Positions 39,801 to 41,572 are shown, counted from the first letter of the stretch. The stretch is DNA of 64,000 nucleotides from Magallana gigas (GCF_963853765.1 NC_088861.1:10044001-10108000); one strand, 5' to 3'. Numbers and translations: made by a program. Notes: generated from the sequence alone by a model not told the origin.

Positions 39801-41572
39801 TTCTCTTGGTTGTTGACAGCTTTTCAAAATGGTGCGAGGCCTTTCCCTTGAAATCCATGGAAGCGACCGAGGTTGCCAGAGTACTCTTTGCTGAAATATT
39901 TGCGAGATACGGAGCACCAAGGACACTTATTTCAGACCGGGGACAAAATTTCATGTCGAAATTAGTCCAAGCCCTTTGTGAACTCTTTGAAGTTACCAGA
40001 CACTATACAAGTGCTTACCACCCACAAACAAATGCTGCTTGTGAAAGGATGAACTCATTTATCAGCCAAACACTAAGATCATACTGTAACAAGGACCAAT
40101 CCGACTGGGTGAAGTTTATTCCGGCTGTCCTCATGGCATACAGATCTACACCTGCCACACAATCAACAATGTTTTCACCATTTCACTTGTTGTTTGGACA
40201 GAAGATGCGCCTTCCTGTTGATGTTGCTCTGACACCAAAACCATCCATGGCACATGAACCCAAGTTACATCTGATGCGTGTTCTGGAACAACCTAAAATA
40301 TGCAGAGAAGTTGCTGCTGAAAACATTCGACAACATCAACTGAAGTACACTCAGCAGCATGATAAGCCTGCACAAGAACCAGACTTCATGGTTGGCTCCA
40401 CAGTATGGCTCTACTGCAGCCATGTTCCTAAAGGAAAATCTCCAAAACTTTTACAAAAATGGGTTGGTCCATATTCAGTAATTTACCAGGGACCAAACCA
40501 TACTTTTAAACTCCGAAGAGATTCAGACCACAAAATTCTGAAGAGTCTCGTACATGCCAAAAGACTAAAAACTTACCATAGTCCTGAGGATAGACCTCAC
40601 TATTTCTTACCGGAGTATCAAGATGTTGTACTCAATCCTGAAGAATTGGACAACCAAAATAATGAGGAGATTCCTCCTCCAAGTGACCAGCATCAAGCTG
40701 ATGCTGATCAGCTTTCAGCTGATGATGAAAATCAGCTTCTCCATGAAGATGATGCTGAAGAGAATAATGATGATAATGATGATGACCAAAGCATCAGAAA
40801 TGCAGCTCATGATCCCCAGCATCAAAATCCTCCACCTGAACCATCATCTTCTAAACCACAAAATCAAGCCAAAAATCAAAACAAACACAAAAGAAATTCA
40901 AAATGCGAAAAACCAAATGAAAAACAATCGAAACCATTTTCTACGGACCAAATAGACAAAATTCTTGAATATAGCCTATACCAAGGGAAGCCGATTTACA
41001 AGATCAAATTCAAAGGTGCAGCTCAAACTTCATGGCAAGACGGAAACCAAATCCCAAAATCCTTTAAAGATACCTTCCATTCCCTCTACAATGCCAAGGG
41101 AAAGAAAAGAAAGCGACCCAACAAAAAAAAACATTTTAACAAACAGGAATCTGTACAAGCCCTTTCACTCCCTCCCAAGAGTCAACAAGAGATCCACACT
41201 GCTTCCATTGACCGAAGAGGCACACATATCATGTTTTACCTTCAAAATCATGATGGATCTACTACAAACGGAAAGTATGCTTATCAAGTTCCAAGCCATT
41301 TATTCAAGCCTTTCTTCAGAAAACTTGAACAAGAAATCAGTGACTGTATATCAGGGAAAGGATGCGAGTTCGTAAACTGGAACATCCACCAATACTTTCC
41401 TGTATCCAGAGTCTTATTCTTTAAACACAGACCAACTCTTTTCATGCATCATCTTACTCCTTCAAAAGCCAGACTCTTGAAAAATTGTCACTCTTCTCCA
41501 GAAGGCATTTTAGCATTCAAAACAAAACTCTATGATCATGTCAAACTCTTCCATACAAATGCAAACCTCTAA
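36851..41572 (+). CDS. pol: Pol polyprotein: aspartic protease, dUTPase-like spacer, RT, RNase H, integrase, chromodomain and extended tail
   Basis: ALVDTGANIS (protease); LDLASGFWQV, LPFGL, YIDDILVFS (RT); VDASD..KEGLA..TDN..NADCLSR (RNase H); H..H..CETC, WHMDF, SDRGQNF, ERMN (integrase); VGPY; IDKIL..GKPIYKIKFKG..SW (chromodomain). Confidence 0.97.
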   Translation: MAPSLEIPSMSQQTSNPNNFLATISAAITNKNKIQIKLSNFHINALVDTGANISVVCNKFLRKLFKNPHIYKSNRSAVTGVCNTSHAILGQTDLEVDVNGLKMPHTFHILENLPHAIILGQDFLEQNNAVIDLTHKYVSFHNETTIASISTPDIQHDNQKHVSLARTESDIMLPPLSESTLSLLVSNIPHGSQVFLEPVNLLTNKNLVGSKCIATCLNNTLPYRILNPLNKSVPLKANSVVSKVFNIDNNYIICFDTHSSDTHTSQSKASTIDHISIAKTLQIHIEKQNLSPAQTQQLQDLIGRNRDVFAKDATELGKTNLHTHSIITSNTDKPVCTPRYSQNPKMRQETERQIQEMLKNDVIEESTSPYQSPVVMVKKSNGQYRFAVDYRKLNSITELVSFPIPKLDEVFDTIADSKSKIFSVLDLASGFWQVPLDEKTKHKTAFITHQGLYQFKRLPFGLTNAPTSYQMLMTKVLQELNWKIALIYIDDILVFSKSFDEHLQHLDLIFQKLRKANLTLQPTKCHFAAQEVKYLGHIISEKGVQVDRAKIAAVADFPQPRNSKHVRSFLGMCNYYRKFIKDYSKICAPLLNLLKKNIKFQWKPEHTDAFNLLKRKLTSAPILVFPDFSKPFVLSVDASDAAIGYVLGQINSQGLENVIAYGGRALRDQEKRWHINHKEGLALIEAIKTFKAYLTSAEFTVFTDNITVRWLDTNKDALGRLGRWALFLQQYKFKIQHRPGTKNQNADCLSRREYPPSDQPCSPSDDDLPAIGSIEASTKEFIATTFEYPEDNQPRKPEILALNTADQHDDHISDNPTLQHLQENCPDFQAIIDYKRTENLPQNVKQATAIVAKAFHYEIINGLLFHFYKERARNQSPDQSLIRQLCIPAPLRYDILLSYHDCIAGGGHQGHERTYAAIRAKYYWPNMYSDIEQYIKTCETCQQSKNSKHQKPVPLRPLPIEDIFSRWHMDFLELPITPNKDRYLLLVVDSFSKWCEAFPLKSMEATEVARVLFAEIFARYGAPRTLISDRGQNFMSKLVQALCELFEVTRHYTSAYHPQTNAACERMNSFISQTLRSYCNKDQSDWVKFIPAVLMAYRSTPATQSTMFSPFHLLFGQKMRLPVDVALTPKPSMAHEPKLHLMRVLEQPKICREVAAENIRQHQLKYTQQHDKPAQEPDFMVGSTVWLYCSHVPKGKSPKLLQKWVGPYSVIYQGPNHTFKLRRDSDHKILKSLVHAKRLKTYHSPEDRPHYFLPEYQDVVLNPEELDNQNNEEIPPPSDQHQADADQLSADDENQLLHEDDAEENNDDNDDDQSIRNAAHDPQHQNPPPEPSSSKPQNQAKNQNKHKRNSKCEKPNEKQSKPFSTDQIDKILEYSLYQGKPIYKIKFKGAAQTSWQDGNQIPKSFKDTFHSLYNAKGKKRKRPNKKKHFNKQESVQALSLPPKSQQEIHTASIDRRGTHIMFYLQNHDGSTTNGKYAYQVPSHLFKPFFRKLEQEISDCISGKGCEFVNWNIHQYFPVSRVLFFKHRPTLFMHHLTPSKARLLKNCHSSPEGILAFKTKLYDHVKLFHTNANL

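What the first reader, a model, noticed from the sequence alone, without database searches (positions are those of the whole stretch)
40949..41572. Integrase tail with HP1-like architecture: chromodomain, basic hinge, second chromo(shadow)-like domain
Seen: after an acidic low-complexity linker comes QIDKILEYSLYQGKPIYKIKFKGAAQTSWQDGNQIPKSFKDTF (chromodomain pattern), then KGKKRKRPNKKK (hinge/NLS). A further segment EIHTASIDRRGTHIMFYLQ...AYQVPSHLFKPFFRKL follows, plus ~70 more residues. By eye it aligns with the HP1 chromoshadow pattern (ERIIGATDSSGELMFLMKW...ANVKCPQVVISFYEERL), and its QVP..F..F echoes QIP..F..F of the first domain. Established: chromovirus integrases carry a single chromodomain that helps target heterochromatin; HP1 is CD-hinge-CSD. 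Inference: tandem chromo folds could let the integrase dimerise or bind PxVxL/HP1 partners, i.e. HP1 mimicry. The insertion site, inside nested TEs, is compatible with heterochromatin targeting.
Basis: partly seen in the sequence, partly recalled or inferred. Interest (0 to 1): 0.75.

Follow-up and report, generated by a model that had tools for sequence, protein, structure and literature searches.

The report
Chromodomain integrase tail with extra double-lobed module
The end of an oyster jumping-gene enzyme carries a genuine but degenerate chromodomain, a conserved basic motif and a previously undescribed, selectively maintained two-lobed domain that only weakly resembles chromo or chromoshadow folds, so the HP1-mimicry idea is plausible but unproven.

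Summary
It is the last 208 codons of an intact 1573-aa PR-RT-RNaseH-IN ORF (36851-41572) in a young Ty3/gypsy element whose 735-bp LTRs are 100% identical.

- **The basic motif (GKKRKRP..K.F) is nearly invariant** in mollusc relatives. It lies in a linker predicted to be disordered.
- **What follows is two lobes, not one.** Each is beta-beta-beta-alpha, and together they form a compact module (pLDDT 88, pTM 0.83). The module is conserved in oyster, mussel and pearl-oyster elements and is under purifying selection (dN/dS 0.17-0.27).

Homology to the chromoshadow domain and HP1-like function remain unproven. The claim of a heterochromatic insertion site is not supported, because Toll-like receptor genes lie nearby. 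In passing: the element and its relatives have no gag.

The parts
35825..35828 (+). Probable 4-bp target-site duplication GTAA, left copy. The right copy is at 43799-43802.
   Evidence: Read from the flanks. It implies LTR ends TATCA...GTCACA.
35828..36562 (+). 5' LTR, 735 bp, 100% identical to the 3' LTR
   Evidence: Exact-match extension; repeat family D3
36565..36582 (+). Primer-binding-site-like sequence (TGGTCGAGAATCCGGTTC), 2-3 nt after the LTR
   Evidence: Read from the sequence. Complementary to a tRNA-like 3' end ...ACCA. The primer tRNA was not identified.
36742..36832 (+). Candidate 91-nt leader intron (GTGAGT...TTTAG) just upstream of the pol ATG
   Evidence: In RNA run X23, 26 reads follow the leader up to 36741 and then continue into an exon that carries an ATG and is not in this window. 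This shows the donor is used in a sibling copy. The acceptor in this copy is inferred only.
36851..41572 (+). Intact 1573-aa Pol ORF. Pfam domains by residue: PR 33-129, RT 378-539, RNase H 602-731, IN zinc finger 887-946, IN core 965-1058, weak SH3-like IN C-terminal domain 1185-1243.
   Evidence: ORF list and Pfam scan
40640..40792 (+). Acidic low-complexity linker, followed by a basic low-complexity stretch at 40853-40903
   Evidence: Composition count. Present in relatives P0001, P0002, P0011 and P0036.
40940..41098 (+). Domain 1: chromodomain (Pol residues 1364-1416), three strands plus a C-terminal helix. The aromatic cage is reduced to one residue (F at the HP1 Trp position). The first cage position is Asp and the third is deleted.
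41096..41137 (+). Conserved basic motif K-G-K-K-R-K-R-P-x3-K-x-F (NLS-like), at the start of a hinge predicted to be disordered (to about 41188)
   Evidence: G58, R61, K62, K68 and F70 are at least 90% conserved in alignments A1 and A3. pLDDT is below 50 at tail residues 63-67 and 75-82. An RNA-library contig has an in-frame 3-nt deletion at 41123.
41189..41356 (+).
41393..41551 (+). Lobe 2 of the terminal module: three strands plus a 16-residue helix, followed by the Pol C-terminus (stop at 41570-41572)
41573..43054 (.). 1.5-kb internal 3' region with no ORF longer than 75 aa on either strand
   Evidence: ORF list. No protein-level similarity to the 3' region of the Pinctada relative.
43055..43064 (+). 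Polypurine-tract-like TAGGGGGAGC directly before the 3' LTR
   Evidence: Read from the sequence
43065..43799 (+). 3' LTR

Best explanation
The stretch is the C-terminal extension of the integrase of a young Ty3/gypsy LTR retrotransposon in an oyster genome. The element is intact and encodes Pol only. The extension has four parts: (i) a genuine but divergent chromodomain with a degenerate aromatic cage; (ii) a strongly conserved basic K/R motif in a disordered hinge, most likely a nuclear-localisation and/or nucleic-acid or nucleosome contact signal; (iii) and (iv) two beta-beta-beta-alpha lobes that pack through their helices into one compact terminal module. The module is a lineage-specific addition found in bivalve relatives and is kept by purifying selection. 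I take the whole tail to be a tethering device that brings the integrase complex to chromatin or to a chromatin-bound partner, as chromodomains do in chromoviruses. In this reading the double-lobed module supplies a second binding surface, for a protein or a nucleic acid. Shown: domain identity of part (i), conservation of part (ii), and predicted foldedness, conservation and selective constraint of the module. Inferred: chromo-type ancestry of the lobes (about 0.5-0.6 for lobe 1, lower for lobe 2) and the tethering function.
For: - Element context: intact Pol ORF, identical LTRs, PBS, PPT and TSD.
- Basic motif: near-invariant across 17 relatives that share only 30-60% identity in the chromodomain.
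- Module, structure: AF2 pLDDT 88.2 and pTM 0.83 from only 9 sequences.
- Module, conservation: present to the same C-terminal end in P0001, P0036 (Mytilus coruscus), P0020 (Pinctada imbricata), P0016/P0037 and P0026.
- Module, selection: dN/dS 0.27 over 130 codons and 0.17 over 99 codons against sibling copies.
- Module, fold: the top three structural neighbours in two search routes are chromo or chromoshadow domains for both lobes.
- Expression: RNA-library contigs and low-depth polyA reads cover the tail.
Against: - The window copy itself gives no Pfam Chromo hit, even at E<=10.
- Only 1 of 3 cage aromatics is kept, so the classical H3K9me reader mechanism is doubtful.
- Foldseek ranks Pur-alpha first for the whole module, with E 0.028 and TM 0.3.
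- The AF2 models rest on shallow alignments of 9-11 sequences.
- No binding, localisation or insertion-site data exist.
- The local neighbourhood contains genes.
Confidence: 0.55

Rival explanations
1. HP1 mimicry in the strict sense. The post-hinge part is a diverged chromoshadow homologue, here possibly an intramolecular pseudo-dimer of two chromoshadow-like lobes. It would dimerise or bind PxVxL-type or HP1 partners, so the integrase would act as a single-chain HP1.
For: - The tail is built as chromodomain, then a basic disordered hinge, then a compact helix-packed double lobe.
- Lobe 1 has a faint profile similarity to the chromodomain in the structurally equivalent register.
Against: - There is no Chromo_shadow profile hit.
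- The relative geometry of the lobes could not be compared with a chromoshadow dimer, because the tools compare single chains only.
- No partner motif or dimer test was possible.
Confidence: 0.15
2. The terminal module has nothing to do with chromo folds. It is a beta-sheet platform with two helices (PUR/Whirly/Mago-like) that binds single-stranded nucleic acid. It might take over RNA or cDNA handling in an element that has no Gag or nucleocapsid.
For: - Foldseek's best whole-module hits are Pur-alpha repeats I-II (E 0.028, probability 0.57).
- The element and its relatives lack gag and any CCHC knuckle.
Against: - TM is only about 0.3 with rmsd about 15 A for Pur-alpha.
- Pur-alpha is absent from the VIA-align top 50 in both runs.
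- The module is not especially basic.
- The best per-lobe matches are chromo-type.
Confidence: 0.15
3. The residues after the hinge are a functionless read-through tail, and the AF2 fold is an artefact of a shallow alignment.
For: - No known family matches by sequence.
- The alignment is very shallow.
- The module diverges quickly, with 9-25% identity to distant relatives.
Against: - dN/dS is 0.17-0.27.
- The ORF is kept open to the same end point in at least five divergent lineages from three named mollusc species.
- One Cys is invariant and the hydrophobic pattern is conserved.
- pLDDT is about 90 in both independent AF2 runs.
Confidence: 0.05

Closest known systems
Chromovirus-type integrase chromodomains (Tf1, MAGGY, Sushi; plant group II chromodomains of Tekay, Reina and Galadriel)
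   Same: A chromodomain lies at the C-terminus of a Ty3/gypsy integrase. The first and third aromatic cage residues are lost, which is how group II chromodomains are defined (PMC3605345).
   Different: Known chromoviruses are described with a single chromodomain or CR motif at the end of Pol. Here the chromodomain is followed by a conserved basic motif and a further double-lobed module of about 125 residues. Group II was reported from plants only. This element has no gag. Its place in an RT/IN tree was not tested.
Chromodomain-bearing Ty3/gypsy 'errantivirus' clade of Cnidaria, Mollusca and Annelida (eLife 2026, PMC13524379)
   Same: A mollusc host and a chromodomain C-terminal to the integrase.
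   Different: Those elements carry gag and an env gene. This one has neither. That paper does not describe extra domains after the chromodomain in the passages I read.
HP1/Swi6/Chp2 (chromodomain, hinge, chromoshadow domain)
   Same: The order is chromodomain, then a basic disordered hinge with a KRK-type motif, then a helix-packed globular C-terminal part. Chromoshadow domains are among the best structural neighbours of lobe 2.
   Different: There is no detectable sequence homology to the chromoshadow domain. There are two lobes in one chain rather than a homodimer. The aromatic cage is degenerate. The tail is part of a 1573-aa polyprotein.
Multi-chromodomain proteins cpSRP43 and CHD1/CHD4
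   Same: Several chromo-type units sit in one chain. cpSRP43 CD2-CD3 is the best Foldseek hit of the whole tail and aligns over 99-131 positions. cpSRP43 chromodomains bind non-histone peptides.
   Different: The relative domain arrangement differs (rmsd above 13 A). Only domain 1 matches convincingly.
Gag-less, Pol-encoding LTR retrotransposons Tos17, RN304 and BARE-2 (PMC3977881)
   Same: An LTR element with an intact pol and no gag, presumed to borrow Gag from a partner element.
   Different: Those are plant elements (Tos17 is a Copia element). Here it is a mollusc Ty3/gypsy lineage in which the gag-less layout recurs in a distant relative from another species.

Membership tests
Chromodomain (Pfam PF00385), for domain 1 | Significant sequence-profile match to the Chromo family | tested here: met
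   The window copy alone gives no Pfam hit. Its phmmer relatives P0022, P0027 and P0031 score 37.1, 34.0 and 30.8 bits against a cut-off of 25.1. The 17-sequence family profile hits solved chromodomains at E 1.3e-9 to 1e-5.
Chromodomain (Pfam PF00385), for domain 1 | Three-stranded antiparallel sheet packed against a C-terminal helix | tested here: met
Chromodomain (Pfam PF00385), for domain 1 | Three-residue aromatic cage for methyl-lysine (HP1 Y/W/Y) | tested here: not met
   In the alignment to HP1alpha and in A3, the first position is Asp, the second is Phe, and the third falls in a 2-residue deletion. This defines the canonical reader subclass, not the fold family.
Chromoshadow domain (Pfam PF01393), for lobes 1 and 2 | Sequence-profile match to Chromo_shadow | tested here: not met
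   Pfam gives no hit at E<=10. Profile A2 finds no chromo or chromoshadow chain in PDB sequences at E<=10.
Chromoshadow domain (Pfam PF01393), for lobes 1 and 2 | Chromoshadow fold | tested here: inconclusive
Chromoshadow domain (Pfam PF01393), for lobes 1 and 2 | Dimerisation through the C-terminal helix, creating a PxVxL-binding groove | not testable with these tools
   Model coordinates cannot be inspected and there is no multimer prediction. Only single chains are compared.
HP1-type architecture | Chromodomain, then a flexible basic hinge, then a chromoshadow domain | tested here: inconclusive
   The chromodomain is met and the hinge is met (pLDDT below 50, KKRKR motif). The third element is a two-lobed module of uncertain ancestry.
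Ty3/gypsy (Metaviridae) LTR retrotransposon | LTRs, PBS, PPT, TSD and the Pol domain order PR-RT-RH-IN | tested here: met
Ty3/gypsy (Metaviridae) LTR retrotransposon | A gag ORF upstream of pol | tested here: not met
   The leader is only 288 nt. No other ORF of 80 aa or more lies in the internal region, and no CCHC knuckle is found in any frame. The Pinctada relative L004 has the same layout.
Chromovirus clade | Placement inside the chromovirus branch of an RT/IN phylogeny | not tested
   No reference RT/IN sequence set was available through the tools.

The most novel reading that the evidence does not exclude
The integrase tail is an array of three chromo-type folds: a chromodomain and two strongly diverged chromo or chromoshadow-like lobes that pair within one chain like a chromoshadow dimer. 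It would be a single-chain HP1 mimic that docks a gag-less, Pol-only mollusc retrotransposon lineage onto heterochromatin or HP1 partners.
Probability: 0.15. Interest if true: 0.7.

Novelty: new variant of a known kind. Interest (0 to 1): 0.5.

Why it matters
Chromodomains on integrases are the textbook case of a transposon choosing its landing site by reading chromatin. As far as I could find, they are described as single terminal domains. This mollusc lineage adds a conserved basic motif and a selectively maintained two-lobed module behind a chromodomain that has lost most of its methyl-lysine cage. That suggests a different or composite targeting mechanism.

If the lobes are chromo or chromoshadow derivatives, this would be the first HP1-like multi-domain reader built into a retrotransposon polyprotein. 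If they are not, the module is a new small fold tied to integration.

The family is tractable. The domain is small, there are intact young copies, it is transcribed, and there are relatives in several farmed bivalves with good genomes. The recurrent absence of gag raises a separate question: how do these elements package and move?

Tried and rejected
- **Pfam on the tail and on segments 2+3.** No Chromo or Chromo_shadow hit, only a noise hit to DUF5557.
- **Single-sequence phmmer against PDB.** Only noise hits to reovirus VP1.
- **Profile of segments 2+3 against PDB sequences.** Nothing.
- **hhalign, lobe 2 against the chromodomain profile and lobe 1 against lobe 2.** No similarity, so an internal duplication cannot be shown.
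- **Foldseek of the two-lobe model against PDB and against BFVD viral models.** No hit at E<=0.001. The Pur-alpha lead was not backed by VIA-align. BFVD gave only uncharacterised phage and giant-virus proteins.
- **Two further word-index protein searches** (profile A2; P0020 tail). No new relatives.
- **Contig look-up for P0007.** Failed.
- **tblastn of Pol against the window.** No second copy.
- **Six-frame comparison of the 3' ORF-less regions of the oyster and Pinctada elements.** No shared coding.
- **Troyka superfamily.** Considered and rejected, because Troyka has CG..CG termini and a 3-bp TSD, whereas this element has a 4-bp GTAA TSD.
- **A Cys/His pattern after lobe 1 as a zinc site.** Rejected, because only one Cys is conserved.

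Full report
**Observation**

The stretch is the last 208 codons of one intact 1573-aa ORF, 36851-41572. Pfam finds the following domains in that ORF:

| Domain | Pol residues |
|---|---|
| Aspartic protease | 33-129 |
| RT | 378-539 |
| RNase H | 602-731 |
| Integrase zinc finger | 887-946 |
| Integrase core | 965-1058 |
| Weak Tf2-type SH3 C-terminal domain | 1185-1243 |

The ORF lies inside an LTR element with these features:
- two 735-bp LTRs (35828-36562 and 43065-43799) that are 100% identical;
- a PBS-like TGG... sequence 2-3 nt after the 5' LTR;
- a GGGGGAG polypurine tract before the 3' LTR;
- a probable 4-bp target duplication, GTAA.

It is therefore a very young Ty3/gypsy insertion. 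An acidic low-complexity stretch (24 D/E in 75 residues) and a basic low-complexity stretch precede the finding. The host is an oyster: DNA and RNA runs that hold the stretch are labelled as oyster samples.

**Domain 1 is a real chromodomain**

Pfam does not report Chromo for this copy, even at E<=10. Single-sequence phmmer against PDB sequences is also blank.

An exhaustive phmmer search of the 214-residue tail against 1.84 billion representative proteins found 31 relatives. Several of the distant ones have the canonical YKVKW..TTWEPE pattern. Three of them pass Pfam's Chromo cut-off of 25.1 bits: P0022 at 37.1, P0027 at 34.0 and P0031 at 30.8 bits.

A 17-sequence profile of the domain (A3) hits cpSRP43, HP1/CBX, MPP8, Polycomb, SUV39H1 and Rhino chromodomains in the PDB at E 1.3e-9 to 1e-3.

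In the alignment to HP1alpha, the first cage aromatic corresponds to Asp and the second (Trp) to Phe. The third lies in a two-residue deletion shared by the whole family. Loss of the first and third aromatic is how plant 'group II' chromodomains are defined (PMC3605345). Canonical methyl-lysine reading is therefore doubtful.

**The basic motif**

The motif FH..Y.AKGKKRKRP...K.F follows the chromodomain helix. H51, G58, R61, K62, K68 and F70 are at least 90% conserved among relatives that share only 30-60% identity in the chromodomain. AF2 gives pLDDT below 50 for tail residues 63-67 and 75-82, which indicates a flexible hinge. An RNA-library contig of a sibling copy carries an in-frame 3-nt deletion inside the lysine run. 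A classical monopartite NLS and/or a nucleic-acid or nucleosome contact is the obvious reading. That is an inference from my own knowledge of integrase NLSs and of the HP1 hinge.

**What follows the hinge**

These are tail residues 88-142 and 159-208, or Pol 1447-1501 and 1518-1567. Predicted alone from a 9-sequence alignment, they form one compact unit with pLDDT 88.2 and pTM 0.83. In the full-tail model the same elements recur at pLDDT about 90.

The module is not an accident of this copy:
- Sibling copies keep it at 55-90% identity (P0002, P0003, P0005, P0007, P0033).
- A mussel-type lineage keeps it at about 25-38% over the tail (P0001; P0036 from Mytilus coruscus).
- More distant lineages have an alignable tail of the same length, ending at the same place, with one invariant Cys. 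These are P0020 from Pinctada imbricata, P0016/P0037 and P0026.

This rests. Limpet relatives (Lottia P0019, Patella P0028) have the chromodomain and basic motif, but their tails look different or truncated.

Nei-Gojobori dN/dS values against sibling copies:

| Region | Compared with | Codons | dN/dS |
|---|---|---|---|
| Module (both lobes) | L002 | 130 | 0.27 |
| Module (partial) | L003 | 99 | 0.17 |
| Chromodomain | L003 | 57 | 0.05 |

The module is therefore coding and functional.

**Is the module chromo or chromoshadow-like?**

By sequence, essentially not. There is no Pfam hit and no PDB hit with the profile.

hhalign of lobe 1 against the chromodomain profile gives one 21-column local match. 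Its score is 19.5 and its probability 17%. That score exceeds all 200 column-shuffled controls (mean 8.0, maximum 12.4), but the reversed-profile control reaches 14.1. It is a hint, not proof. Lobe 2 shows nothing, and the two lobes do not match each other.

By structure, an all-against-48,161-chain VIA-align search ranks three chromo-type domains first. A second-look search gives the same picture:

|---|---|---|---|---|---|
| 2 | Rhino chromodomain | 4.3 | 3.2 | 59 | 42 |
| 2 | Chp2 chromoshadow | 4.1 | 3.0 | 58 | 42 |
| 1 | SUV39H1 chromodomain | 4.0 | 3.2 | 58 | 42 |
| 2 | MPP8 chromodomain | 3.9 | 2.3 | 54 of 59 | 76 |
| 2 | Swi6 chromoshadow | 3.8 | 2.4 | 53 of 59 | 76 |
| 1 | MPP8 chromodomain | 3.7 | 2.5 | 53 | 76 |

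My reading is as follows. Each lobe has chromo-like topology. Chromo ancestry is plausible for lobe 1 and open for lobe 2. A specific chromoshadow identity is not demonstrated. The lobe-to-lobe packing could not be compared with a chromoshadow dimer, because the tools compare single chains and do not give coordinates.

**Context claims**

The window holds no second copy of this pol. It contains LRR+TIR ORFs of Toll-like-receptor type at 11869-12933 and 20749-22843, and a HEPN_DZIP3 ORF at 62685-63287. Nothing I tested shows that the insertion lies in nested TEs or in heterochromatin. Copy number of the flanks could not be measured here.

**Mechanism**

The best-supported account is a composite C-terminal tethering extension of the integrase. 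It combines a chromodomain with a reduced cage, a conserved NLS-like basic hinge, and a lineage-specific double-lobed binding module. The rivals are strict HP1 mimicry, a PUR/Mago-like nucleic-acid platform that might compensate for the missing Gag, and a functionless tail. The last is largely refuted by selection and conservation.

**Comparison and novelty**

Chromodomain integrases are well known, including in molluscs (PMC13524379). Full-text searches found no description of a chromoshadow or tandem chromo array in a retrotransposon integrase. I rate the finding as a new variant of a known kind.

**Other observations**

- *No gag.* The element has no gag. The leader is 288 nt, and a 1.5-kb stretch without ORFs follows pol. 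The Pinctada relative L004 has LTRs 99.7% identical and the same layout. The Mytilus gene model P0036 also starts directly at the protease. Gag-less, Pol-encoding elements are known from plants (Tos17, RN304, BARE-2; PMC3977881).
- *Leader splice donor.* Twenty-six cDNA reads of run X23 use a splice donor at 36741|GTGAGT. They join it to an ATG-bearing exon of a sibling copy that is not in this window. This supports the leader intron noted earlier by the scan (s1-399484).
- *Expression.* PolyA RNA-seq depth over this copy is low (0-2x, mostly 95-99% identity). Expression of this particular copy is therefore not shown.

**Limits**

- The AF2 models rest on 9-11 sequences.
- No phylogeny was built.
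- The N run at 60870-60998 was left untouched.

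Noticed in passing
window 36563-36850 and 41573-43064; L004 4459-4741 and 9405-11426: The element has no gag. The leader before the pol ATG is 288 nt, a 1.5-kb stretch without ORFs follows pol, and no CCHC knuckle is found in any frame. A distant relative in Pinctada imbricata (LTRs 99.7% identical) has the same Pol-only layout, and a Mytilus coruscus gene model (P0036) also begins at the protease. 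The layout looks like a trait of the lineage. Plant precedents are Tos17, RN304 and BARE-2.
   Followed up: partly
window 36741/36742 (donor) and about 36832/36833 (candidate acceptor): 26 cDNA reads of run X23 follow the leader up to 36741 (before GTGAGT). They then continue into an exon, absent from this window, that carries an ATG (MPPS.., compare MAPSLE here). A sibling copy therefore splices a short leader intron just upstream of pol.
   Followed up: partly
window 11869-12933, 20749-21831, 21824-22843: There are long ORFs with LRR and TIR domains, typical of the intron-poor Toll-like receptor genes that are expanded in bivalves. The retrotransposon sits 14-25 kb from them.
   Followed up: no
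window 62685-63287: A 200-aa ORF with a DZIP3-type HEPN domain (Pfam E 2e-24).
   Followed up: no
window 44533-44716 and 46107-46290; 33452-33571 and 46583-46686: Two arrays of a 21-bp tandem repeat lie 1.5 kb apart downstream of the element, and (TC)n microsatellites lie on both sides. They may be the ends of another repeat, but this was not examined.
   Followed up: no
window 42292-42334: Reads and one RNA-library contig show a 43-nt 'goes back' joint. This is a tandem-duplication polymorphism in the 3' non-coding region of sibling copies.
   Followed up: no
window 41850-42649: PolyA RNA-seq depth is somewhat higher over the ORF-less 3' region (up to about 2x) than over pol (0-1x). It could be a 3'-coterminal or independent transcript, but there are too few reads to judge.
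   Followed up: no
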